From the NCBI GenBank assembly GCA_047495785.1, contig JBLDXI010000003.1:1922001-1986000 (forward strand): a stretch of DNA of 64,000 nt. The letters run 5' to 3'. This DNA comes from Lepidodermella squamata. Its lineage: Eukaryota > Animalia > Gastrotricha. The position numbers were made by a program, and so were the translations under genes. Within the stretch, counting starts at the first letter, position 1. Every line of letters starts with the position of its first letter. A model generated the notes under the pieces. That model made no database searches. It was not told where the DNA came from and worked only from the letters and a program-made list of their open reading frames with translations. Positions 9,001-57,646 of the stretch are shown piece by piece.

Positions 9001-12000
9001 GATTCCATATGTTTAGAACTATTGCAGTACTCCAAGTAACTTGATAGGTCGCGCCACCAGGGCACTGAAATTGCCCTGTGCTATAATGAGACATAATTTG
9101 CAATGTAATAATTTTTCGCATTAAACGTACAGAATCCGCGCGGTTGATATGGTGAATGTAATATGGTGAATACCAGCAGCAGTCTTTGTCGCTAGGACGT
9201 AAACAAGTGTGGAAGGCGCACTGGTAAGATATATCCATTCCATGACCGTGAAGCCACCTGTTCTCAACATTTGGCTCGTCTGGGTAATTGTCTGGGTCGG
9301 CTGATAGGTAGCCGCTGATTGGTAACTGTGCGATTTCATAGGTGGAGATACAGAAGGAGCCCAGAGGAAGGAGCCATATTGAGTAACAGGATCGGCTGAC
9401 GTAGCTGCAGGCTCGTCAGTGAACCACTGAGTAAACCGGTAAACCATATCATGCGTCCAGGTTACAACCGGCCGGAGTCCATAAATCGGGCATCGTGAGA
9501 TCTGCTGAATCTCTCGACTCGTCAAAGCTTGGCTGTAAATCTGAACACACGCAAGGCGATCGTTCAGTGTCAATGTCGAGGGCGATGGCAAAGCGCCGAT
9601 TCTGAACTGCCCCGAAGTTTCTAGCTCACAGCCTTGTGGTAGCTGCCTTAACATGGCGAGATTAGCCTCGTGGTAGACAGCAAACTGGCCTGTAGCATAG
9701 TGGTAGGTAATAGCGATATGGCGCAAGCGTTGGATAGTCGCAAGTCTTGAGGTCATGTTTGCACGGAAAACCCCAGTATAAGCCATATTGCGGCAAGTCA
9801 CAGTGAAGTTGAACAGGCCGTCTTTACACGTGACCCCCAGAGAGTAAGCCGGGGGCGAGGCTGTGGGATGGAGGTAGCCAAGAACTGCTTGGGTCGTAGT
9901 TTGAGTCTGGCACATGACGTAGAAACTTATTGTCAAAGCAAACGGTGACGCAAGCTCGCCATTCGAGTTGGGATGGGACACAAATGAGTTGCTATCACCA
10001 TTGAAGATCATCGCTGAATTCGGGTACTTGTTATTTTCGGCTCCAGTCAGGAAACTTCCGATTTGAACACTACTGCCTTGAGTGGCACTCAAAGATGATC
10101 CCATATAGTCATTCAGCACATATTTCGAATCCATGGGCCAAAATACTACCGGGTTGGGAACTGAAATATAACAACTAGTTTTACATTACTAATTTGGAAG
10201 AGGAATTCATTACGCTGCCAGGGACATAGCATAGCATCATCCATTTCGCTTTTCGTCAAAATTCGATTGTACACTTGAACACAGGCGAATTTTCGATCCA
10301 TCAGCCTGTTACTGCTCGCCAAAAATGGCCCAAAAGTTATGGATGTATCGGTAAAAATAATGTTCGTGTAAGATGTAGTTAAGTCGCCAGCTCCAATAAC
10401 TACGCCATTTGCCAGCATGTAATAAGACGCTTCAAGAATAGTGATTAAACAAGCAAAAATATAGCTATTGTTACAAAATTCAACGAACATCTTGCGCGAT
10501 CAAACACAAATCCAATAAAATACCATCGATCGACTTCCAATGGGACGTAGGATAGGCCTTGGCTCGCCATTTTATGACCATACAATGTGTATTGCGAGGC
10601 ATTATTCGTTACTTGATATGCGAGAATGTCATAGAACCTTTTGTATGAGAAATGCCAGAAATCGATCAATACAAAAGCAATATTGTTGTGGGTTATTTAC
10701 CCAGTATTATCATCCGAGTTGAACTGAAGGATAACGGTTGTCGTCGAAGGCCACGTTCCACTACCAATATAAAGCCACAAAAAGACAGAAAAGTCGTTCG
10801 TAGGCGAGTGATAAGCAGCTGTAGGAGCCGTTTTCGGAATAAAAACCGAAGCTGTTTGGGCGGTAGGAGCCAAACGAAAGGCACTTTTGGGTTTGCCAAA
10901 CGGACCGGTGACTAGCTCAACTGCTGGCGAAACAACGCCGTCTGAACCTTGGCCACTCAGATCGTTCGCCATGGTCACGGCATCGAACAGCCAAAGACCA
11001 GAAGGCTCGAGAGCAGAGTACATTCTCGGAGGAGTTATGATGACATCCGTTAGAGATTGCGTGGAACCAAGGTCGATTGTAACATAAGATGGGTTGTTTA
11101 GATCTGGATCGACTCTGACACAAGAACGAAGTCTCCCTTGCGCGTCTCGATTTGGCTGATCAGTCAGTTTTCCATTGTTGGGCCTCATTCTCTGAAATGA
11201 CGAGCCGGTAGAGGACGTGACTGGCTTAAGAATCGCAAGGTCCGAATTGCTTAAGAGCATTGAAGGAATTTCTAAGCGATAAAGAGGTAATCATGTTTTT
11301 ATGTTTCTCTTCACGTTACTACCTCGGCAACCAAGAAGCTCCCATCGAATGCCTGCAACAGTTGTCGACTGTAATACATTCAAGCGAACCATCCTTGCGA
11401 TTATCGGGCCGTCAAAGAATGAAGTTGTATAATAATCTCCCGAATTGGCGCTCGAAAACACCTGGAAAGAACTTCTCATGGGAAATGATGTATAAATTTG
11501 CGAGCCAAACCTGAAAATCGCCTTCACTTGCCCCCGTTCTTCGAATATCTTGCCATCTCGATGAGCCTTCCAGCTCCGAACGGTACTTCAAGCTGAATTG
11601 AGTTGCTCCTTTGAGCCCCTGAGCATTAGGCCTTGATAACATAGTCGAAATTCCCGTCACTATAAAGTTTTTGAGCAGATCAACTTGAATCCACTCGAAT
11701 GTGGTACTCGCTGCTTGCCATCCATGCCACGGGTTGTTCAAGTTGGCGAACTTTGCTGTTCGATTTGCTGGATCAGATGAGGATTGGGAAAACTGATTGT
11801 CACTCAGTTCCATAGCTTCAATACCGAGAGGTTCTGGACGGAAAATCACGAGAATCAACATCTTGCTTACATTACCGTAAACCTTACCGCGGCAAAGCGC
11901 TGGGCAGCCGTAGTACTCTATTTGTAATCCCCAGTCTCCATTGGGTAAAAATGTTCTTGGGTAAAACCGAACGTGGTGAGCGATGACAGGCCTCCACAGA

Positions 12001-45446: not shown

Positions 45447-46544
45447 TATTTACCGATCGATGGGATTCAACCGTCGCGAATAACCTTATCGTGTGCTGTT
45501 TATCGATTATGAAAAATGATTGTGAAACGTCGATTGGAGAAGCTTTTGTGGCGTAACCTATCCTCACTCCCCATTGTGCAAATATCAGCTGCACTCGCTG
45601 ACAATTCAAGATTAAGTTACAGCTAATTGTCGATGTTCGTCTAAATTGCAGTTATTTCTTGGTTTCTGCACTTCTTTGCCTTTTATTTGTCGAATTGGAC
45701 TTGGACTGACAAGTTGATAGTTGTTCTTCGCAAAATTCGTTGGCAATAAAATGACAGAAACAGAAGTGAGAAAGATGCTGCTGCGGTTATTTCCGAGCTG
45801 CAGAGAGGCCTGTTTCCTGAATATAGTTTGAATAGGCGGATCAAGTCACACTCTCTGCAGTGATAAATTACGGGTTATTATTGTAACCTAACGCTGGAAA
45901 AAACGATTTTCTCTACTTGCAGTGTTAATTGCTTTAAGCTTTAAGCTCTTACGACTGTAAACAATACAGCTTAGTTCTAACATGATTTTCCTGTGTCTGT
46001 ACCTGGTACGTCAAAGGGGCTGCTCTTTATGCTTTTCTTTCAAGGAGCTGTGTCTCCCTAATCTCTTCTAGCCTTTGCGCCTGATACAGCCAAAATCTGT
46101 CTGTTACCTATTTGTGAGTAGTCATTAAAGTACACGATCTGTTCCTGCAGCACGTTTCTAGCGTCTGTACATGTTACGGACAAAACCTTTGTCTGTTACT
46201 CTTTTATATCGTCTGAACCTGGTACAACCAAGGAACTGAGTCCGCTAAGTTCCAGTGTCTGTACCTGTTACAGCCAGAACCCTGTGTCTGCGGGGCTTTT
46301 CTACCGCCTGTACCTGGTACCGACATCCAAAACCCGGGTCTAACCCTCCTTTCAAGCGTCTGTACCTGGCACAGCAAAGTGGCTGTCCATTCTGCGAGCT
46401 GCGAGTCGACCACCGTTTACACTTCCTGCAACTCATGTAGCCAAGAACTGCGTCTGCATTTTGTTAATGTTGACTAGCAAATTTGCAGAGAGCATCGGTT
46501 CGAGCTTTCACAGTTACATAGGAAAGAATTCTTTGAAACTGCAA

Positions 46545-46856
46545 ATGGACACAGAAGTGATATGCCGCTACTGTGGTTTATTTTTCGACTCCATAAGTGA
46601 CTTGACGACGCACACCGATTCCGCGCATGGACCCAGTCATCAAGTGCCAGCTCATTTCTGCCTTGCCTCATCAACTCCAATAATTAATGGAGAAATTCAT
46701 TCCCGTTCAACAAACAATGGCAGTCCACAAGCTAGCGGCGACCGAGTGGTAATTGATGATTGGGGCACTGGTGGTGTTTTCTTCTTCTCGTGTTCTTTGG
46801 ATGAATCTCCGAGGTACTTCCGCGCGTCCAAGCTTGCTGACATAAAATTGGGATGA
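46545..46856 (+). pseudogene. Single C2H2 zinc-finger ORF, probably a fragment
   Basis: ICRYCGLFFDSISDLTTHTDSAH fits C-x2-C-x3-F-x5-L-x2-H-x4-H; no clean downstream exon. Confidence 0.4.
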
Positions 46857-48050: not shown

Positions 48051-49049
48051 ATGTGCTCTCAGCTGATTTTCTTCTTACTAATAGCAATCAATGCAGCCCA
48101 TGTATGATGAATTAGCAATACTAGAATATAATTGATATCTGGATTAATCTCACAGGCAATTACCTTTGCTGGCGGGGTCGGTTACTCTCCATTCCACATG
48201 GACGAGTACTACAACGGCACGATCGAGCAATACACCGCTGGTATTGATCAGGATTTTGCACAGATCAAACAGTTCTATGGCTACGTCCGAACTTACGCTA
48301 CGAAGCGAAGGGGAGTAGCTTTAGCTCCTATTGCAGCTAAGCATGGTTTAAAGTTGTATCTAGGGCTCTTTGTTACTAGGGATTCTTGGTACCAAGAGCA
48401 GTTTGATGCAGCTGTCGAGGCTGCGAAATACAACAGAAGTGCTATTGAGGCAATTATTGTTGGAAATGAATGCTTCCCCGATCCTTTCTCTGCTGATGAG
48501 ATGATCGAGAGAATCCAGGCTCTGCGCAAGAATTTGACAGCTGAAGGTATCACTGACATTCCGATCGGTACCGTTCAGACGATTGGAGACTGGGCACCGA
48601 AAGACGACCCGATTCGACTTGCGGATGCGCAGAAATTGGGCAAGGCTAGTGACATAATTGGCGTGAATATCTACCCCCTCTACAGTTCGAATTATGACCC
48701 GGCTAAACCAACCGCGTCGCTTAACTCGAACTGGAACAGAATGATGGACATCGGCGGCCATCCTGCTGAGAAGATTCGCTTGACAGAAACAGGCTGGCCA
48801 ACAGATGGAAGCGACACGCCAACCTCTGGCAATATTCCCAGCATTGCTAATTCTATCAATTATTTCCGCGGCTTCCAGGCCTGGCGGCCCACGCGCGGTA
48901 AAGACGGGGCTCCTGCGTTCTGGTTTGCATTTTACGACTCGAATCCGAGGGAAGGAAATGGGTACAAGAAGTTTTTTGGACTGCGCGACTACAAGCGGCA
49001 GGTCAAAGCGGGAGCCCCAGCCGAATACCCGCCTGCTCTGGCTAAATAA
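48051..49049 (+). CDS. Secreted glycoside hydrolase family 17 (beta-1,3-glucanase/glucanosyltransferase), copy 1 (exons 48051-48101, 48156-49049)
   Basis: Signal exon MCSQLIFFLLIAINAAH. GH17 motifs GVGYSPF, VRTY, KLYLG, IIVGNE (acid/base Glu), IIGVNIYP, LTETGWPT (nucleophile Glu), FWFAFYD..FFG. Confidence 0.92.
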
Positions 49050-49471
49050 AAAGTATCCATCCTTCAGATAAACTGCAATTTATTGGACCTGCTTTATCTT
49101 TATCCCATCTTTTTCGGTAGAGCTCTGTTTTCTGTTTCAGCTCTGTTACATTCAGTAAATGAATGGATTTTATTTCCTCCTTTAGTTGGCATGTCCCATT
49201 TGGCGACTTTTTTAAGCGAAAAAACGGGTTAAATTGGGCTTGTGTAAACATCCTCTCCAATACGTCTTCCACCTGATCCTGTCCTCAGAAATAAGGCTAC
49301 ATAAACTCTTGAGTAAACACGTATAACCGAATAAATTAGCTTTGACCTCGCATAAAAAGCCACACGTCCTCGTTAGTAATTAGGCCTGAATAGAGTTTGT
49401 CATGCATGATAAATGATTATCGAGTATATAATTGCTCAGTTTCGAGATACATGAAGCAAGAATAATAAAAA

Positions 49472-50496
49472 ATGTCAACTAAATTACTTGCCCTAGTTTT
49501 TGGACTTGCAGCAATTGAGTCGTCCATGGTAAGCAGCCATTCTTAACTGTTCAATCACACGATAAAGCATTTATGTTTTAGGCGATTTCCTTTGCTGGAG
49601 GGGTCGGTTACTCCCCATTCCATATGGACGAGTACTACAATGGTACTAGTGAACAATACGCTGCAGGAATCGATCAAGATTTCGCACAAATCAAGCAGTA
49701 CTATCTCTATGTTCGAACGTACGCCACAAAGCGTAAAGGAGTAGCTTTCGCTCCTATTGCAGCTAAGCATGGTCTTAAACTCTACCTTGGCCTCTACGTC
49801 ACTAAGGAATCTTGGTATCAAGAGCAGTTTGATGCAGCTGTCGAGGCTGCGAAATACAACAGAAGTGCTATTGAGGCAATTATTGTTGGAAATGAATGCT
49901 TCCCCGATCCTTTCTCTGCTGATGAGATGATCGAGAGAATCCAGGCTCTGCGCAAGAATTTGACAGCTCAAGGTATCACTGACATTCCGATCGGTACCGT
50001 CCAGACCATTGGAGACTGGGCCCCGAAGAATAACCAGACCCGCCTCGCCCAGGCTCAGAAACTTGGCCAGGCGAGTGATATTATCGGGGTCAATATCTAC
50101 CCGCTGTACAGTTCAAACTACGACCCGAAAAAGCCGACTTATTCCTTGAATCAGAACTGGAACCGAATGATGGATACCGGCGGCTATCCTGCCGACAAGA
50201 TTCGCTTGACTGAAACTGGCTGGCCGACGAATGGTACAGACAAACCATCGTCGGGAAATGTGCCAAATATCACGAATTCCGTCAATTACTTCCGCGGATT
50301 CCAAGCGTGGCGACCAAATCGTGGTAAGGATGGAGCGCCTGCCTTCTGGTTTGCGTTCTACGACGCCAATCCGAGGGAGGGCACTGGTTACAAGAAATTC
50401 TTCGGCTTGAGAGACTACAAGCGACAGGTCAAACCAGGAGCTCCTGCAGACTACCCGCCAGTCGCGAATCCGCCGAATTACCCGACATTTGGCTGA
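49472..50496 (+). CDS. Secreted GH17, copy 2 (exons 49472-49528, 49582-50496)
   Basis: Signal exon MSTKLLALVFGLAAIESSM; same catalytic motifs as copy 1. Confidence 0.92.
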
Positions 50497-51081
50497 AAGC
50501 TGATTGCTGAGAATAAACAAATGGACTAATTGCTTTACCATTAATTTGTAATAATCACATGGTCTCATTTGCATTTTCCGGTAATTTTCGGATCTTCAGG
50601 AATTATGATTTTTAAGGCGGCTTTATTCTGGACTGTGGATGTAATAAAAATTCTATTATTTGTGTGTTAAGGCGGATATTTTTTATTTGTTTTATTTGCC
50701 CACGAACTTGTATATAGAAATCATGAAGGCGCGATTAATGCGCACATTCCTGAACAGGCGAGTGTATCGAGAAAAATAAACAAATCAAGTGAAATATGGA
50801 GCGCCAAGGAAATTGTTTGCTCTTCCGGCGTCAATAGTTACCCAGCTCACAAAGGTGTTGCGTCGTATCGATTTTCGTTTAGTCTCAGGTCTTAGAAATA
50901 AAGCCAAGGATTAAAATCTAACCCAATTCAAAACTATAAATATTTAACGCACAATTTTGAAAAACAAACCGTTCATTTTTTCAGTTTCGATCAATTTTCA
51001 TTTGGTTGTAGTTTTTTTGGCGAATTCGGGTCATTCTATATTTGCATTCAATTAATTTAGTTTATTTGCTCGCTGATAAAA

Positions 51082-54000
51082 ATGAGCATGAAGGCGCGAT
51101 TTAACGTAGCCGCTACAAAGGTGGCCAACGTATCGCGCCTGCACCTCGCCATGCAAAGCATATCTAGGACAGTATCGGCAGAATCAGAAGGCGATGAACG
51201 GCAGCGGGAGCAAGAGCAAGAAAAACAGCGGCGTGGCGATCATTCAGAAGAGCCGTCAGTAGCGTCGTCACAACTCAGCATCAGGTCAATCCACCAGAGG
51301 CCGAATTTTCTCCGCAGTTTTATACACATTCGAACAGCTGTACGGCGATTTCGTAGCCTCGGAAGAATGAACGACGACGCTATGTCGATCAGGACTCGCC
51401 TCAGTGCGATTTCTGATGAAGATTTGCTTGATTCTGCTTCGGTCTATCGGAGTAGCAGTGTTCCGGGTTTGAACAGGCTCGATCCGACCGAAGCTGCCTT
51501 GCGAGACCCAGCGATGGCCAAGAAATTGATGCTGATCGTAGCTGCGAAGAAGGGCGAATGGTCCTCGGTGGATTTGATGTTACGTGGCATGAAAAAACAC
51601 TCGTCACGCTTGAATGCGGCTGACCCAGCGACTGGAACGACGACGTTGATGCTAGCGTGTCAGCAGTCTCGGTTTTTGCTGGTTGGAAGAATGTGTGAGT
51701 TGGGGGCGTGGCTCAACCAGCGAGACGAGGAACGCAGAACTGCCTTGCACTACGCAGCTCGAGAAGGACATGAGGGTGGGCTGAGTTTTCAACCTTTGTC
51801 CTCCAAGTGCTCTTTCCTAACTATTTTTTCACACAGAAATAGTTAAGCTGCTTCTTCGCAACCAAGCAGATCCGAATTTGTTTGGAGGGGTAAGTAACGT
51901 AGTAGTTTATGTCTTTCATTCCACTTTCAAAATCATCAAGACATTTGAATTTTGAATTTCGGAATGTTATGCAATGCTTCTTCATTCTTCAGAAAGACAA
52001 TCAGCTGCCACTCCACATCGCAGCGTTGCGGACGGGACCCGGTGCTTTGGTCTCTGCGCAGCAACTACTTCGCTCCTCACTCAAAGAGTGCCGAACCAAA
52101 AAAGACCGACTTGGCAACCTGCCAATAACCTACGCTGTCGAAATCGGCAGCCACACTCTAGTGCGAGATTTACTACAACACTACGCAAAGGAGCAGGTTA
52201 CATGGCGGGACGAACACACCGGCGACTACTTGGTTCATATCGCCGCGAGGAAAAAATTCACTGAGATTATGAAATTACTATGTCTCCTGGGCGGCGCTGA
52301 TCCTAATGTTCAAAATTTAGACGGGCAAACTCCATTACATATTTCGGCGAAATTAGGCGATGAAGCTATGTTTAGGATGATGCAGTCATTTCGACCTAAC
52401 CCGGATTTGATTGATAAAAAGGAGCGAAGTCCTCTCCACGTTGCGGCCGAACACGGCCATGCTGAGATTGTCGAAAGTCTCGTCGAGAGATTTCGCGCTA
52501 ATGTCCATATGAGGACTAAGGATGGTTCAACGCTGATGCACCTTGCGGCTGATAAAGGATTCACGGATGTCGTGCTGGCCTTCATCAAGCGAGGGGTGAC
52601 GCTGAATATGCCGAATAAGGCCGGTGCGTTGTGTTTACACGCGGCGGCGCAGAATGGGCACATTAAGGTTGTGCGCACCCTGATTAAAAATGGCGCATAT
52701 TTGGATGCAAGGACGCGCGATGGCTACACTGCGCTGCATCTATCGGTTCTTCATACGAGGCCAGAAATCATACAAACGCTTCTAGGTAAGAAAATTTGGT
52801 AAGAGAATGTATTGCATAAGTGTGTAATGAGCTCGTATGAATTTTCAGGCCAAGGTGCAAAAGTTGACCTCAAAGGTGGTCCTCTTCGCGAGACCCCACT
52901 CCACATCGCAGCTCGTCTCCCCGAAGGCTACCTATGCGCAGATATGCTCATCAAAAGCGGCGCCGGTGTGAACAACACTACTGATGAAACCCTCGAAACG
53001 CCCCTACACATCGCGGCCAAAAGTGGTATGATCGATCTATTGAAATTGCTTCTTGAGGAAGGCGCCGATCCTATGCGAATGAACAAATCCGGCGAGTCAG
53101 CCCTACATATGGCCGTTCGGCATTGCCACTTCGAAATCGCAAAGGCCATTATTCAGTTCGTCAACTCAATTTCATCAGGTCGAGAGGCGACTAATTTGGT
53201 GAACTTGTCGAATAATGAGGGCGAAACTTGTTTCCATCTCGCCGCCGAGCTTGGCAAGTCGCAGATGCATCATCCATTTGAAGACGTCGACATTATCCGG
53301 CTTTTGCTTGAAAATGGGGCTGATCCTTTGGCAAATTCTAAATTGACGAATGAATCATCGCTGCATTACTGTGCGCGGTCGGGGAATCCGGAGATTTTTC
53401 ATGAGATTGTTCGACATTTGAAGCATAATTTCCAGACAGCTTGTAACAGACAGGATCGCATGGGCTGGTCGCCGGTTATGACTGCGTGCTATTCGGGACA
53501 TGCTTCTGTGGCGGAAATTTTACTGGCTAATGGGGCCAGGGCGGATGTGTTTGATGAGGTAAAGGAGACAATTTTCGAAGTTTGGAATTTTATTTATTAT
53601 CTATTCCCAGTTTGGAAAAGCTGCTCTGCATCTTGCGGCTGAGAATGGTCACGGTTCGTGCTGTGAGATCCTCCTTAAATACAAAGCATTCGTCAATGCC
53701 AAGTCTAAACTCGGAATTTCAACCCTCCACTACGCCGCACTGAGTGGCCATGCCGAGTTGGTTGGTCTTCTTATTCGAAAGTACAACGCTTCCATCAATG
53801 CGCTGTCCTTGGATAAGAAAACGCCGCTGCATATGGCAGCTGGAGCTGGACGAAAGGAAGTCTGCCAGCTGCTGATGAATCTGCGAGCAGATGCGGATGC
53901 AATAGATGCGGTAAATACATTTTCGTTTCTTGTGAACATACAATTTTGAAAATGTTGAATACAGCTTGGTCAAACGCCGCTTCATTTGGCTGCGGAAAAC

Positions 54001-57000
54001 GACCATTCGGAAGTTGTAAAATTGTTTATAAGATACAAACCTGAACTTGTCACAGCTGCGAGCAAGGTAAAAGCAGTTTTTCCTAAATTTACAAGAAAAA
54101 TTGATGAAATTACCGAAAATTACGTCTTGATTGATAATTCCAGAGTGGCATGACCTGTGCTCACATTGCGGCAAAGAATGGAAGTGAAGCCGTTATAAAA
54201 TTGCTTATGCAATTCAACAAATCCTTGGTCACAACCGTTCGGAATCCTGTTAATGAAGCTTTGCCCCTTCATCTCGCCGTGAGCGCGTCGCACGAGTACG
54301 TTGTTAGGCTTCTAATTGATGCTGGCTCATCGCCTATTGCTGAAAACCACGAGGGAATGACTGCTATTCACATGGTAAAATAAGCAAACAAAATTCGCGC
54401 TTTTTCATTATTTTGACCAACAATTTAGGCGGCAAAAGAGGGGGATATGGAGGTTCTACAGGCTATTATTGCTAGTTCTCCCCGTGGAGCATTGAAAACT
54501 AACAGTTTAAAGGTAAGAACTCATTTCGGAAAATTTCCTATTTTCACAGAAATTATATTTAGAATGGAATGTCTCCGCTACATTCCGCGGCATTTTACGG
54601 CAAGTCCGAGATTGTTCGCGAGCTTCAAACTCGAGTCGACGTCAACTCGAAAACGGACCTGCCTCAAATGCCTGGCGTGGTCAGCGATCCAAGTTTGAGA
54701 GCTCTGATCAGCGCTGATGTAAGATAGATCTACATCAATTTTCAGATTTCTATTATTTCCACTTCTAGCATGGCTTGACTCCTCTTCATATGGCGTCTTA
54801 CAGTGGCCATGAAAACGTCGTTCGATTGATCCTTAATAACTCAAGTGTCCAAACCGAAGCATTCTCGGCATTATTAGCCCGAGTGCCTTTACATTATGCC
54901 TGCCAACATGGACATCTCGTAGTAGTAAGCCTTTTGATGTCCCGCTCGGCTGGTCACCTTCGGGCTGAGGACAAAAACGGCTGTACTCCTCTACATCTCG
55001 CCGCTGAGAATGGCCACGCCGAAATGGTTTCGACGCTATTAGCCCAAGGGTCTGATATCAGTAAGGCGGACGCTGATGGCCGAACAGCGTTGCATTGTGC
55101 TGCTGGGAATGGTCATTTAGTCGTAGCTCAGATCCTACTCGAAGCAGGAGCTGTTGCTAATGCAAAGACGAAAGACAACAAAACACCCCTTGCTCTTAGC
55201 GCGAAGGGTGGCCATACCCAGGTCTTCTATTTCCTGTTGAAAAAAGAGCATGATACTGATGAGCTGATTGAGGACAAAGCCTTCCTGATGGATCTGATGC
55301 TTTGCGGAAAGCAGAATCAAAATCAGATCATTGATGAATTCATCCTTCATTCAAAAGCCCCGTTAGATACGGCGGTCAAGTTAGCTGAGCTGTTCCATGG
55401 TTTGGCTTTGAGGGAGAAGGAAAGGGCGAAAGATTTGGGCGAAATTTCCCGTCACTGCGAACGCATGGCTGCCGAGCTCATCGGAATCGCATCAACCATT
55501 GCCCCTCCTGCAGTAATTCTCAGGGCTACAGACACTAAGGGGAAGCAAATGTTGGATATTTTGCTGCAGTACGATATGAAAGAGGTCGTTGAGCACGCGG
55601 CTGTTCAGCGGTATTTGAGTGACATTTGGGCTGGGCCGATGACTAACTGGTCGATGGGTCGTCTGTCGCTGCTCTTCTTCGGCTTCTTGACATGCCCACC
55701 ATTGCTGTGCTACTTTTGTCTACCATTCAAGCATCATAATTATCACCACATTCCCATCATCAAATTCATGGCGATGCTTACGTCTCATTTGTACTTGATC
55801 GCACTTCTTTCGGTTGTAGCTGCCGTCCCACTTCATCCGATAGTTTACCGAGAGGATTTATATCCCATATGGTGAAATTGTTAATGTTTTATATTCCTAA
55901 TTTCTAAGCTTGGTCGAAACAAATAGGTACGAGCTACTTTGCTTAGCCTGGGTATCCGGAATGCTAGTAGCTGAGTTGACTCGCCAAAATCGGTCGACAG
56001 GACTCGGAATGTTGCGATTCATTATCATCGGCTGTTCAATGGTAGCGATATTCCTTCATATTGGGGCAATAATTGCGGAGTAAGGAATCGAATTTTGTTC
56101 TCTTTCCTAGTAAAAGATGTGATAATTTTTTCTTCAGTGATGTTTATAACGACCGGCCCTCTGCAGCCATAATAATGTATCTGCGAAATTTCATGCTGTC
56201 TCTTGCACTTCTTGTGGCCATCGTTATGATCCTGGGTCTGTTATTCCCAAGTTTAGCTATAAATAATGCTGACCTGATTTGATTTTCAGATTTCCTTCAG
56301 ATTCATCACCTGTTCGGCCCCTTCGGCATCATAATTCTCAACGTTATGGTTGATCTTATGATTTTCATAGTGGTCCTGTTCCTTTTCTTGATTGCATTTA
56401 CATTCCTGATTTGCTGCTTGTTCGCGCCGATCAAAAAAGATCCAATGCCTGCCGCGAATACGACAAATATGACGAATATGACAAATCAAACCATCGCTGA
56501 TTCTGGCCAATTGCCTCTTCTGAATATTTCAAATTCAAGCAGCGAGCCGATTATTTCCTCCGGCTCGGGAGAAGGGCCTGAGGAAATTCCTGTAACAACG
56601 ACTCAATCTGGATCAACACGAAAAAAACGAGAAGCAGAAAAAAGTGATGAGAACTCAAGCAAAAAGAGCCAACCTTCCTGCAAGCCACGAACGGAAAAGG
56701 ATACTGGTGGCGAGAAGTTGAAGCGCAAGAAAAGGGACGCTGATCAAAAGCCAGATTACACGGCTTATGGCCGTGTTATTGTCAATACAGACGATCTCAC
56801 TTACATGAGTAATGAGTTAGTTAATTTAATAATTTTATTTCAATTTATTGGTTTGAACTGGCTGGTTAATTCTCCAGAGATCCTCAAACGTTGATCGAGA
56901 TTTTCTTAGCGCTGTACTGGGCGATGTTTCAAATGCTTGACTATCCAGGGGCTCTTCCTCAGATCAAGAATGGCCCGGCCTGGGCTGATACCCTCTATTT

Positions 57001-57646
57001 GATTTACATCTTCATGTGGCTCACGATATCTGGGATAGTCCTACTGCCTCTTCTCATCGCTATTCTGACTGAAACGTACAAAATGGTTCATATGAGATCT
57101 GAGACCGAGTGGAAATTCGTCAGAGCTACTTTGATACGAGACATGATCAAGTTACCTGCGGCTCCTACTCCCCTCAACCTCATTGTCAGGCCGTTTCTCT
57201 ATCTTAGATCTGTTCATAAGCACAAAAGTAAGAAATAATTTCATTTTACTCATAATTAACTCGGATTTCTTAACAGAGCTGATGTGCACACCTTACGCGC
57301 AATATTATTTGGATGAGGACGAGCATGAAGGAGCTGATGAACTCCTGCAGACCCCAGAAGCGTCTGGTGCCCAATCTGGCGCGGCAGGTAAGATTTCTCA
57401 GTCATCTCAGACCTGTTGATCCTATATGATGCCTTTTGATCAGGAAATACCGGCGCAGCGACTGAACAGAAGAGCATTGGTTTAGAGCTTCTAGAGAACG
57501 TTTTAGATTGGTCTATTGTTGTAAGGCGTTATCGATCTGGTATCAAGGGAGAAACGGACGAACAAATGGCTGAGGAGGAAGAGCAGGCCGAGCTCGAGAA
57601 AGAGGAAGGCGCGGCTGAGGCGGCTGCCGCTGCGCCAAATGCTTAA
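51082..57646 (+). CDS. nompC: TRPN/NOMPC-family ion channel, paralogue 1 (multi-exon)
   Basis: Long ankyrin array with NOMPC signatures (RTKDGSTLMH, ETPLHIAAR..G..CA.ML.KSGA, ARADVFDE.GKAALH), LFGPFGIII, EWKF TRP box, APTPLNL, ENVLDW..V.RYR; stop at 57644-57646. Confidence 0.93.

What the first reader, a model, noticed from the sequence alone, without database searches (positions are those of the whole stretch)
48051..50496. Tandem secreted GH17 glucanases that look horizontally acquired, possibly from oomycetes
Established: GH17 is typical of plants, fungi, oomycetes and bacteria and is generally absent from animals. Seen: two intact copies with both catalytic Glu, an intronless catalytic domain and a separate signal-peptide exon joined by a host-sized intron, ~600 bp from an animal TRPN gene, which argues against contamination. 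Motifs YSPFH..EY, KLYLG.FVT.ESWY, PIGTVQ, DIIGVNIYP and KIRLTETG resemble my recollection of oomycete GH17. Inference: domesticated HGT for digesting algal or fungal beta-1,3-glucan, or for defence.
Basis: partly seen in the sequence, partly recalled or inferred. Interest (0 to 1): 0.75.

Follow-up and report, generated by a model that had tools for sequence, protein, structure and literature searches.

The report
Oomycete-type glucanase gene pair in gastrotrich
Two neighbouring, intact genes in a tiny freshwater animal (probably the gastrotrich Lepidodermella squamata) encode secreted enzymes that act on beta-1,3-glucan; this enzyme type is otherwise typical of water moulds, so the genes most likely come from an old gene transfer whose descendants are also found in rotifers.

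Summary
Two intact tandem genes (48051-49049 and 49472-50496, + strand) each have a 17-19 codon hydrophobic leader exon, a 53-54 nt GT..AG intron and one exon encoding a whole GH17 barrel with both catalytic Glu. An ankyrin/TRP channel gene starts 586 bp downstream.

Fold and profile searches place them in GH17. The closest named relatives are oomycete GH17s and Brachionus rotifer proteins, at about 40% identity.

The genes are resident, not contaminant:
- at least 8 paralogues lie on 5 contigs;
- GC3 equals that of host exons;
- introns are host-sized;
- dN/dS between the two copies is 0.08, with dS above 1 and a 150-nt gene-conversion tract.

In a careful tree the pair, paralogue C and one metagenome protein form a divergent clade. 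Its place among the oomycete clades is unresolved. The other gastrotrich paralogues group with rotifer proteins and a small group holding one Scenedesmus protein.

So this is an old transfer of an oomycete-type gene, not a recent private one. The donor lineage and the number of transfers are unresolved, and the function (hydrolase or transglycosylase; diet or defence) is untested.

The scan had already reported a paralogue elsewhere in this genome (s1-365980). I found no paper describing it.

The parts
48051..48101 (+). Copy A, exon 1: start codon and 17-codon hydrophobic leader (probable signal peptide)
   Evidence: Translation is MCSQLIFFLLIAINAAH and is followed by GT. Secretion is inferred from hydrophobicity only; no predictor was available.
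48102..48155 (+). Copy A intron, 54 nt, GT..AG, phase 0
   Evidence: The intron sits at the same position in copy B and in paralogue C.
48156..49049 (+). Copy A, exon 2: whole GH17 (beta/alpha)8 catalytic domain, 297 aa plus stop. Acid/base Glu codon at 48468, nucleophile Glu codon at 48786. AATAAA at 49045 overlaps the stop.
49472..49528 (+). Copy B, exon 1: start codon and 19-codon hydrophobic leader
   Evidence: Translation is MSTKLLALVFGLAAIESSM.
49529..49581 (+). Copy B intron, 53 nt, GT..AG, phase 0
49582..50496 (+). Copy B, exon 2: GH17 catalytic domain, 304 aa plus stop. Glu codons at 49894 and 50212. AATAAA at 50512.
48393..48542 (+). 150-nt tract identical base for base to 49819-49968 in copy B. 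It covers the GNE catalytic motif. Probably recent gene conversion between otherwise saturated copies.
   Evidence: dS is 0 inside the tract and 1.3-2.0 outside it.
49819..49968 (+). Partner of the conversion tract, in copy B
51082..57238 (+). Context: downstream host gene with many ankyrin repeats, membrane segments and a TRP-box-like motif (NompC/TRPN-type). It starts 586 bp after copy B.
   Evidence: Earlier notes s1-422689 and s1-422834 describe the TRPN pair.

Best explanation
The locus holds two tandem, functional genes for secreted single-domain enzymes of glycoside hydrolase family 17.

Mechanism (inferred from the family). Each protein is a (beta/alpha)8 barrel working by the retaining mechanism. 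Glu105 (GNE, end of strand 4) is the acid/base and Glu211 (TETGWP, strand 7) is the nucleophile. The substrate is beta-1,3-glucan, which is either hydrolysed or re-joined by transglycosylation.

Origin. The genes belong to a family of at least eight members in this animal genome. The genome's size, contig number and GC fit the published Lepidodermella squamata assembly. The family is of the kind that has diversified in oomycetes. It most likely entered an animal lineage by horizontal transfer long ago. Since then it has gained lineage-specific introns, taken on host base composition and duplicated.

The A/B/C subfamily. Copies A and B, with paralogue C 68 kb upstream, form a fast-evolving subfamily. 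It has lost the N-terminal PAN module seen in paralogue G and in rotifer relatives. It has shortened two loops. It has replaced a usually conserved third Glu by Lys.

Shown and inferred:
- Shown: gene structure, family membership by fold and profile, catalytic residues, linkage to host genes, purifying selection, gene conversion, distribution of relatives.
- Inferred: secretion, substrate, hydrolase versus transferase chemistry, biological role (digestion of algal, fungal or oomycete glucan, or defence against such parasites), and direction and number of transfers.
For: Gene models.

GH17 membership:
- phmmer to PDB 4WTP, E 1.6e-8 over residues 30-288
- family profile to 4WTP, E 5e-38; 6FCG, 4e-24; 8AKP, 4e-21
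- AlphaFold2 model, pLDDT 96.3, pTM 0.93
- the ten best Foldseek hits are all GH17
- catalytic columns: E in 75 of 77 rows at both positions, present in A and B

Residence in the host:
- The window is C3:1922001-1986000 of a 121-Mb assembly; 12 matching pieces lie on 5 contigs.
- GC3 is 0.53, against 0.44-0.55 in the TRP exons.
- Introns are 53, 54 and 63 nt, against a 63-nt host intron.
- Other paralogues carry introns at other positions.

Selection: dN 0.084, dS 1.06, ratio 0.08; a 150-nt identical tract.

Oomycete-type family:
- The best named hits are Saprolegnia, Aphanomyces, Thraustotheca and Pythium.
- Paralogue D is about 50% identical to Phytophthora and Pythium proteins.
- Fungal and bacterial GH17 are only 22-29% identical to copy A.
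- Oomycete secretomes hold up to 37 GH17 each, and the family is marked as part of the ancestral oomycete secretome (PMC4316629).

Careful tree (LG+C20, 60 rows):
- ingroup supported at 96/85, with oomycete proteins in both ingroup and outgroup
- A/B/C plus P0039 form a clade at 100/97
- paralogues D, E and G group with the rotifer group and the Scenedesmus group at 95/90

A single clade of all 21 non-oomycete rows is not rejected (AU p 0.33).
Against: - The Pfam GH17 model scores 27.3 and 28.0 bits, just under its 28.2 cut-off. The same is true of undisputed oomycete and rotifer members.
- The backbone of the tree is a polytomy. No specific donor lineage is identified, and A/B/C could be a separate acquisition.
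- Many rows are unnamed metagenome or Logan proteins, so 'oomycete clade' rests on the named fraction.
- A native-looking Scenedesmus gene (locus GC 79%, spliced neighbours) sits inside the clade with gastrotrich D/G. An alga-animal route therefore cannot be excluded.
- The third conserved Glu is Lys in A and B, and the two nearest solved structures are transferases, not hydrolases. 'Glucanase' may be the wrong activity.
- No expression or splicing data were available.
- The assembly comes from multiple-displacement-amplified DNA (PMC11660948), which can make chimeras. Eight paralogues and old tandem divergence argue against an artefact.
Confidence: 0.75

Rival explanations
1. Same enzymes, different history. 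The A/B/C subfamily was acquired separately from paralogues D, E and G, or the donor was not an oomycete but another freshwater protist or green alga. On this view the oomycete-rich tree reflects database sampling.
For: - In the careful tree A/B/C plus P0039 do not join the other gastrotrich paralogues; they sit in the backbone polytomy.
- A gastrotrich-only clade is borderline (AU p 0.076).
- The Scenedesmus group is sister to D/G at 98/91.
- Many relatives are unnamed.
Against: - One clade of all 21 non-oomycete rows is not rejected (AU p 0.33).
- A/B/C is a long branch (0.35 + 0.62 + 0.44), which is prone to misplacement.
- All named rows on both sides of the ingroup root, apart from the three non-oomycete ones, are oomycete.
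- Only one green alga carries the gene.
Confidence: 0.2
2. The proteins are beta-1,3-glucanosyltransferases (remodelling or branching enzymes) or glucan-recognition proteins, not hydrolytic digestive glucanases.
For: - The best sequence match among solved structures (4WTP, RmBgt17A) and the best Foldseek match (8AKP, G7048) are transglucanases (PMC9745967).
- The position aligned to RmBgt17A W157 keeps an aromatic residue (Tyr).
- The third conserved Glu is Lys in A, B and P0039.
- Paralogue C has GNS in place of GNE, so at least one member may be non-catalytic.
Against: - An animal has no beta-1,3-glucan wall to remodel.
- The position aligned to RmBgt17A Tyr102 is not Tyr (GNECFP).
- 6FCG, an endo-laminarinase, matches about as well.
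- Both catalytic Glu are kept under strong purifying selection.
Confidence: 0.3
3. Vertical inheritance. An ancestral eukaryotic GH17 was kept only in a few animal lineages and lost everywhere else.
For: - GH17 occurs in plants, fungi, stramenopiles and bacteria.
- Relatives occur in two animal phyla.
Against: - The animal sequences are 40-51% identical to oomycete proteins but only 22-29% identical to fungal and bacterial GH17.
- They nest among oomycete paralogue clades.
- No other named animal appeared among the listed hits.
- A 2025 paper states that GH17 had not been documented in animals (PMC11800479).
Confidence: 0.04
4. Contaminant DNA, or an amplification or assembly chimera joining oomycete DNA to an animal contig.
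For: - The published assembly used multiple displacement amplification.
- 370 non-metazoan contigs had to be removed from it (PMC11660948).
Against: - Host-like GC3.
- Short GT..AG introns at a conserved position.
- Eight paralogues on five contigs.
- Tandem copies with dS above 1 and a conversion tract.
- Animal genes on both sides.
- No hit closer than 45% identity in 1.8 billion representatives.
Confidence: 0.01

Closest known systems
Oomycete secreted GH17 proteins (Phytophthora, Pythium, Saprolegnia, Aphanomyces; annotated 'glucan endo-1,3-beta-D-glucosidase')
   Same: - Same GH17 subfamily: 40-45% identity to A and B, about 50% to paralogue D.
- Same catalytic motifs (VGNEN, LTETG, NIYPFF).
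- Signal peptide, frequent tandem or multi-domain copies, and frequent PAN modules.
   Different: - Host is an animal.
- A and B lack PAN, have two shortened loops and have Lys for the third conserved Glu.
- Base composition and introns are those of the animal host.
Brachionus (monogonont rotifer) PAN-GH17 proteins, e.g. P0001 of B. calyciflorus and 'family 17 glucosidase SCW11' of B. plicatilis
   Same: - Animal-resident members of the same family.
- 57-62% identical to gastrotrich paralogue D.
- They share the N-terminal PAN plus GH17 layout with paralogue G.
- The gene is spliced and lies beside an animal channel gene.
   Different: - Only 41% identical to A and B.
- A, B and C form a separate, faster-evolving clade without PAN.
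Bemisia tabaci GH17 Bta06115 and Bta06118 (PMC11800479)
   Same: - A tandem pair of secreted GH17 genes in an animal, acquired by horizontal transfer.
- One of them is a proven beta-1,3-glucanase.
   Different: - The donor there is a plant and the proteins are of plant GH17 type.
- The present genes are of oomycete type and sit in a different animal lineage.
RmBgt17A (PDB 4WTP) and Penicillium G7048 (PDB 8AKP), fungal GH17 beta-1,3-transglucanases; FbGH17A endo-laminarinase (PDB 6FCG)
   Same: - Closest solved structures by sequence profile and by fold.
- Same barrel and the same two catalytic Glu.
   Different: - 16-19% identity in the structural alignment.
- Residues tied to transglycosylation in RmBgt17A (Y102, W157, E158) align to Pro, Tyr and Ser here.
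- The activity cannot be read off the sequence.
GH16 beta-1,3-glucanases of animals (own knowledge: the usual invertebrate laminarinases and glucan-binding proteins)
   Same: - Same likely substrate and the same likely roles (diet, recognition of fungal glucan).
- This genome also holds at least 3 GH16 loci.
   Different: - Unrelated fold (beta-jelly roll) and unrelated family.

Membership tests
Glycoside hydrolase family 17 (CAZy GH17, clan GH-A) | (beta/alpha)8 barrel most similar to solved GH17 structures | tested here: met
   AlphaFold2 model: pLDDT 96.3, pTM 0.93, eight strand-helix units. Foldseek ranks 1-10 are all GH17 entries: 8AKP, 6FCG, 4WTR/4WTP, 6JMS, 1GHS, 2CYG, 4HPG, 1GHR, 3UR8. 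E-values run from 4e-16 to 3.5e-11; TM-score normalised to the query runs from 0.59 to 0.72.
Glycoside hydrolase family 17 (CAZy GH17, clan GH-A) | Significant sequence or profile match to family members | tested here: met
   Single sequence to 4WTP: E 1.6e-8 over residues 30-288. The 77-row profile to 4WTP: E 5e-38; also to plant GH17 1GHS at 1e-9.
Glycoside hydrolase family 17 (CAZy GH17, clan GH-A) | Pfam PF00332 above its gathering score | tested here: inconclusive
   27.3 and 28.0 bits against a 28.2 cut-off, C-terminal third only. Rotifer, oomycete and Scenedesmus relatives score 16-22 bits, so the model is weak for this whole subfamily.
Glycoside hydrolase family 17 (CAZy GH17, clan GH-A) | Catalytic acid/base Glu after strand 4 (N-E motif) | tested here: met
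   VGNEC, Glu105 of the catalytic exon. The column is E in 75 of 77 rows. It aligns with IVGSE of 4WTP.
Glycoside hydrolase family 17 (CAZy GH17, clan GH-A) | Catalytic nucleophile Glu in strand 7 (x-E-[ST]-G-W-P) | tested here: met
   RLTETGWP, Glu211. The column is E in 75 of 77 rows. It aligns with the residue mutated to Ala in 4WTR.
Glycoside hydrolase family 17 (CAZy GH17, clan GH-A) | Third conserved acidic residue near the C-terminus (E-x-x-F-G; own knowledge: part of the ionisable 'tetrad' described for barley glucanases) | tested here: not met
   Lys271 in A, B and P0039, and His in C. The column is E in 65 of 77 rows. The bacterial rows in the alignment also lack it, so it is not strictly defining.
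Glycoside hydrolase family 17 (CAZy GH17, clan GH-A) | Activity on beta-1,3-glucan (hydrolysis or transglycosylation) | not testable with these tools
   Needs recombinant protein and laminarin or oligosaccharide assays.
Horizontally acquired gene resident in an animal genome | Physical linkage to undoubted host genes, with host-like composition and introns | tested here: met
   The genes lie at 1.97 Mb of contig C3. An ankyrin/TRP gene starts 586 bp downstream. GC3 is 0.53 against 0.44-0.55 in host exons. The introns are 53-54 nt GT..AG.
Horizontally acquired gene resident in an animal genome | Phylogenetic nesting inside a non-animal clade | tested here: met
   Careful tree: ingroup at 96/85, with oomycete clades in both ingroup and outgroup. 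The backbone is unresolved, so no donor lineage can be named.
Horizontally acquired gene resident in an animal genome | Absence from most other animals | tested here: inconclusive
   Brachionus is the only named animal among the listed hits. Many hits are unnamed, and no animal genome collection could be searched directly.
Secreted protein | Cleavable N-terminal signal peptide | not testable with these tools
   Hydrophobic 17- and 19-residue leaders on a separate exon. No signal-peptide predictor was available, and the joined leader plus mature sequence was not built.

The most novel reading that the evidence does not exclude
Gastrotrich paralogues D, E and G, the Brachionus rotifer proteins, a native Scenedesmus gene and several unnamed freshwater eukaryote proteins form one supported clade. 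An N-terminal PAN plus GH17 layout was seen in members of three of its groups: paralogue G, Brachionus with its unnamed relative P0190, and Scenedesmus. The one oomycete protein checked has PAN at the C-terminus instead.

The most novel reading is that this gene has passed between unrelated freshwater eukaryotes (animal to animal, or alga to or from grazer). Alternatively it entered a very deep spiralian ancestor and was lost almost everywhere.

On top of this, the A/B/C subfamily (third Glu changed to Lys, shortened loops, one member with GNS for GNE) would have evolved a new activity or a glucan-sensing role.
Probability: 0.2. Interest if true: 0.7.

Novelty: new member of a known kind. Interest (0 to 1): 0.45.

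Why it matters
Animals rarely carry GH17. A 2025 paper on whitefly genes of plant origin says the family had not been documented in animals before (PMC11800479).

Here an oomycete-type GH17 family is a long-resident, expanding and selected part of a gastrotrich genome, and it is shared with monogonont rotifers. That adds a little-studied phylum to the list of animals that widened their carbohydrate-degrading repertoire by gene transfer.

It also gives a concrete set of genes for asking how micro-grazers digest algal storage glucans or resist oomycete and fungal parasites. The patchy clade (gastrotrich, rotifer, green alga) offers a test case for eukaryote-to-eukaryote transfer in freshwater communities.

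It is not a new kind of system. The enzyme family, the fold and the phenomenon of acquired glycoside hydrolases are all well known.

Tried and rejected
- Pfam alone gave only sub-threshold GH17 hits. I replaced it with profile and fold evidence.
- My first coordinates for the leader exons were off by one or two bases. They were corrected.
- I took the 316-aa gene next to P0039 for a second GH17. It has no GH17 match and is probably part of a receptor guanylate cyclase.
- I tried to place P0039's organism through its neighbouring cyclase domain. The domain matches 51 places in the own genome at 59-91% with no synteny to contig C3, so it is uninformative.
- I tried to name the Scenedesmus-group and rotifer-group metagenome proteins through their contigs. 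They have no informative neighbours.
- AU tests for a gastrotrich-only clade (p 0.076) and for an animal clade without the Scenedesmus group (p 0.064) are borderline and settle nothing.
- Literature searches for GH17 or glucanase with rotifer, Brachionus, gastrotrich or oomycete plus metazoa found no description of these genes. The bdelloid glucanases in PMC11258130 are bacterial-type licheninase-like genes, not this family.
Full report
**1. What is in the sequence**

Between 48051 and 50496 on the + strand lie two genes of the same design.

| | Leader exon | Intron | Catalytic exon |
|---|---|---|---|
| Copy A | 48051-48101, MCSQLIFFLLIAINAAH | 48102-48155, 54 nt, GTATGA..CACAG | 48156-49049, 297 aa |
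| Copy B | 49472-49528, MSTKLLALVFGLAAIESSM | 49529-49581, 53 nt | 49582-50496, 304 aa |

- Neither copy has an internal stop.
- AATAAA signals lie at 49045 and 50512.
- The unit repeats with a spacing of 1426 bp. The proteins are 87% identical.
- The next gene starts at 51082, 586 bp after copy B. It encodes long ankyrin arrays, then membrane segments and a TRP-box-like EWKFVRA.
- One intron measured in that gene is 63 nt (52786-52848). The GH17 introns are therefore host-sized.

**2. Family membership**

- Pfam's GH17 model scores just under its threshold: 27.3 and 28.0 bits against 28.2. It does the same, or worse, for rotifer, oomycete and algal relatives.
- Copy A matches the GH17 transferase RmBgt17A (4WTP) at E 1.6e-8 over nearly its whole length.
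- A 77-sequence profile (A1) matches 4WTP at 5e-38, and also matches bacterial, fungal and plant GH17 structures.
- The AlphaFold2 model is confident (pLDDT 96.3, pTM 0.93). Its ten best Foldseek hits in the PDB are all GH17.
- The acid/base Glu (VGNEC, Glu105) and the nucleophile Glu (LTETGWP, Glu211) are present in both copies.
- A third Glu, kept by 65 of 77 relatives (E-K-x-F-G), is Lys in A, B and their nearest outside relative P0039. It is His in paralogue C.

**3. Is it part of the animal genome?**

The window is C3:1922001-1986000 of a 121.2-Mb, 151-contig assembly. Size, contig number and GC fit the published Lepidodermella squamata assembly: 122 Mb, 157 contigs, 43% GC (PMC11660948). 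I did not prove the species.

The genome holds at least eight GH17 paralogues on five contigs:

| Paralogue | Place | Features |
|---|---|---|
| A, B | this window | the tandem pair |
| C | 68 kb upstream on contig C3 | same intron position (63 nt); GNS in place of GNE; hydrophobic C-terminal tail |
| D | contig C29 | no intron; leader in the same exon |
| E, F | contigs C36 and C42 | intron at residue 207/208 |
| G | contig C74 | N-terminal PAN-like module; intron at yet another position |
| H | contig C36 | partial copy |

Further evidence of residence:
- GC3 of A and B (0.53) lies within that of the neighbouring TRP exons (0.44-0.55).
- A and B differ by dS 1.06 (1.3-2.0 outside one tract) but by dN of only 0.084, a ratio of 0.08.
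- A 150-nt stretch around the GNE motif is identical base for base (48393-48542 = 49819-49968), which points to gene conversion.

Contamination or a chimera is therefore very unlikely. The duplication is old and both copies are under strong purifying selection.

**4. Relatives**

- Among 1.84 billion representatives, 988 proteins match at E<=0.001 and none is more than 46% identical.
- The top named hits are oomycetes: Saprolegnia, Aphanomyces, Thraustotheca, Pythium, Globisporangium, Lagenidium.
- The single best hit in the first search is Brachionus calyciflorus.
- Paralogue D is 57-62% identical to Brachionus calyciflorus and B. plicatilis proteins and to unnamed relatives. It is about 50% identical to many Phytophthora and Pythium proteins.
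- The B. calyciflorus gene is spliced and lies beside a Slowpoke channel gene, so it too is animal-resident.
- P0039 lies on metagenome contigs (GC 38-40%) next to a receptor-guanylate-cyclase-like gene. That looks animal, but the organism is unknown.
- One green alga, Scenedesmus sp. PABB004, has a PAN-GH17 gene in a 79%-GC locus among spliced housekeeping genes.

**5. Phylogeny**

FastTree overviews of 186 and 245 domain rows and a careful IQ-TREE run (LG+C20+F+G4, 60 rows, 320 columns) agree on four points.

(i) A, B, C and P0039 form a clade (100/97) on a long branch.

(ii) A second clade (95/90) holds:
- gastrotrich paralogues E, D and G;
- a 'rotifer group' (the two Brachionus proteins and six unnamed ones);
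- a 'Scenedesmus group' (P0059 and four unnamed proteins), which is sister to D/G (98/91).

(iii) Both clades sit in an unresolved backbone with five oomycete clades.

(iv) The outgroup also contains oomycete proteins. Of the 56 named rows in the 122-row clade, 53 are oomycete.

AU tests:

| Constraint | p (AU) |
|---|---|
| All 21 non-oomycete rows as one clade | 0.33 |
| Gastrotrich-only clade | 0.076 |
| Animal rows of the second clade, without the Scenedesmus group | 0.064 |

None of these constraints is rejected at 0.05.

PAN layout. N-terminal PAN plus GH17 is found in paralogue G (weak), Brachionus, P0190 and Scenedesmus. In the oomycete protein examined (P0054) PAN is at the C-terminus.

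Rows left out of the careful tree are listed in the report's tried-and-rejected field.

**6. Reading**

The family is oomycete-type, and the animal copies nest within oomycete diversity. Fungal and bacterial GH17 are far more distant: 22-29% identical to copy A. Vertical descent from an opisthokont GH17 is therefore unlikely.

The transfer is old:
- introns were gained at different positions in different paralogues;
- base composition has been ameliorated to that of the host;
- silent sites are saturated even between the tandem pair;
- relatives exist in a second phylum.

Three things cannot be decided: whether one or several transfers happened, whether an oomycete was the direct donor, and how the Scenedesmus gene fits.

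The animal distribution known here is two phyla of micro-invertebrates.

**7. Mechanism**

- Shown: a complete GH17 barrel with both catalytic Glu, strongly constrained.
- Inferred: secretion (hydrophobic leader; no predictor was available) and retaining catalysis on beta-1,3-glucan.

Hydrolysis versus transglycosylation is open. The nearest solved structures, 4WTP and 8AKP, are transglucanases and 6FCG is an endo-laminarinase. Of the RmBgt17A residues linked to transfer (Y102, W157, E158), the aligned residues here are Pro, Tyr and Ser.

An animal has no glucan wall to remodel. I therefore favour hydrolysis of dietary or parasite glucan (about 0.6 to 0.3), but this is inference.

The genome also has at least 3 GH16 loci, so these are not its only candidate beta-1,3-glucanases.

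**8. Novelty**

- Acquired glycoside hydrolases in animals are a known kind. A tandem GH17 pair of plant origin is described in whitefly, in a paper stating that GH17 had not been documented in animals (PMC11800479).
- I found no paper on GH17 in gastrotrichs or rotifers.
- Databases already label the Brachionus proteins as GH17.
- This scan had already reported an oomycete-type GH17 in this genome with 'at least eight copies' (s1-365980). Its 936 letters equal the length of paralogue D's open frame. My results agree.
- New here: the divergent A/B/C subfamily, the conversion tract, the selection estimate, the careful tree with AU tests, and the shared N-terminal PAN layout.

**9. Limits**

- No transcript data were available.
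- No animal genome collection could be searched.
- Many relatives are unnamed.
All searches used exons by reference.

Noticed in passing
window 48393-48542 and 49819-49968: A 150-nt tract is identical base for base between two tandem genes whose silent sites are otherwise saturated (dS 1.3-2.0). This points to recent gene conversion centred on the catalytic GNE motif.
   Followed up: yes
L003:1381-2478 (G000:C3, about 1901750-1902850, 68 kb upstream of the window's pair): Paralogue C has the same leader-exon and intron design. It has GNS in place of the acid/base GNE, TETAWP, and a hydrophobic C-terminal tail (SIFALILLAILSLVM). It may be a membrane- or GPI-anchored, non-catalytic glucan binder.
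   Followed up: partly
L007:1483-2775 (G000:C74): Paralogue G carries an N-terminal Cys-rich PAN/Apple-like module (sub-threshold in Pfam) in front of GH17. Brachionus, P0190 and Scenedesmus P0059 have the same layout. The oomycete P0054 has PAN at the C-terminus.
   Followed up: partly
L005 and L006 (G000:C36:752789-753767 and C42:375759-376726); L011 (C36:743431-744230): Paralogues E and F are nearly identical copies on different contigs; they may be a segmental duplication or uncollapsed haplotypes. H is a partial copy 9 kb from E whose match contains a TAG, and may be a pseudogene.
   Followed up: no
L017 (Scenedesmus sp. PABB004, GCA_014905635.1, JABVCE010000012.1:217562-232903): In a 79%-GC algal locus a PAN-GH17 gene lies next to a PAN-thaumatin gene. 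The GH17 domain groups with gastrotrich D/G and not with other algae, none of which appeared in the searches.
   Followed up: partly
L016:6922-7803 and 10001-11035 (ENA ERZ19610909 ptg000877l): An unidentified eukaryote in a long-read metagenome (GC 52%) also carries two GH17 genes of the Scenedesmus group, 2 kb apart.
   Followed up: no
L013:8001-14024: P0039 is the only outside relative of the A/B/C subfamily. It has no intron and lies upstream of a receptor-guanylate-cyclase-like gene on a 40%-GC metagenome contig, probably from another micro-invertebrate.
   Followed up: partly
G000:C2:208257-214182, C28:1197719-1198245, C55:784157-784555: The genome also has GH16 (Pfam PF00722) loci, two of them in tandem on contig C2. 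The GH17 genes are therefore not the only candidate beta-1,3-glucanases.
   Followed up: no
window 46461-46856 (+): A 131-aa open frame with a weak C2H2 zinc-finger match lies between the upstream transposon and the GH17 pair. Its status as a gene is unknown.
   Followed up: no
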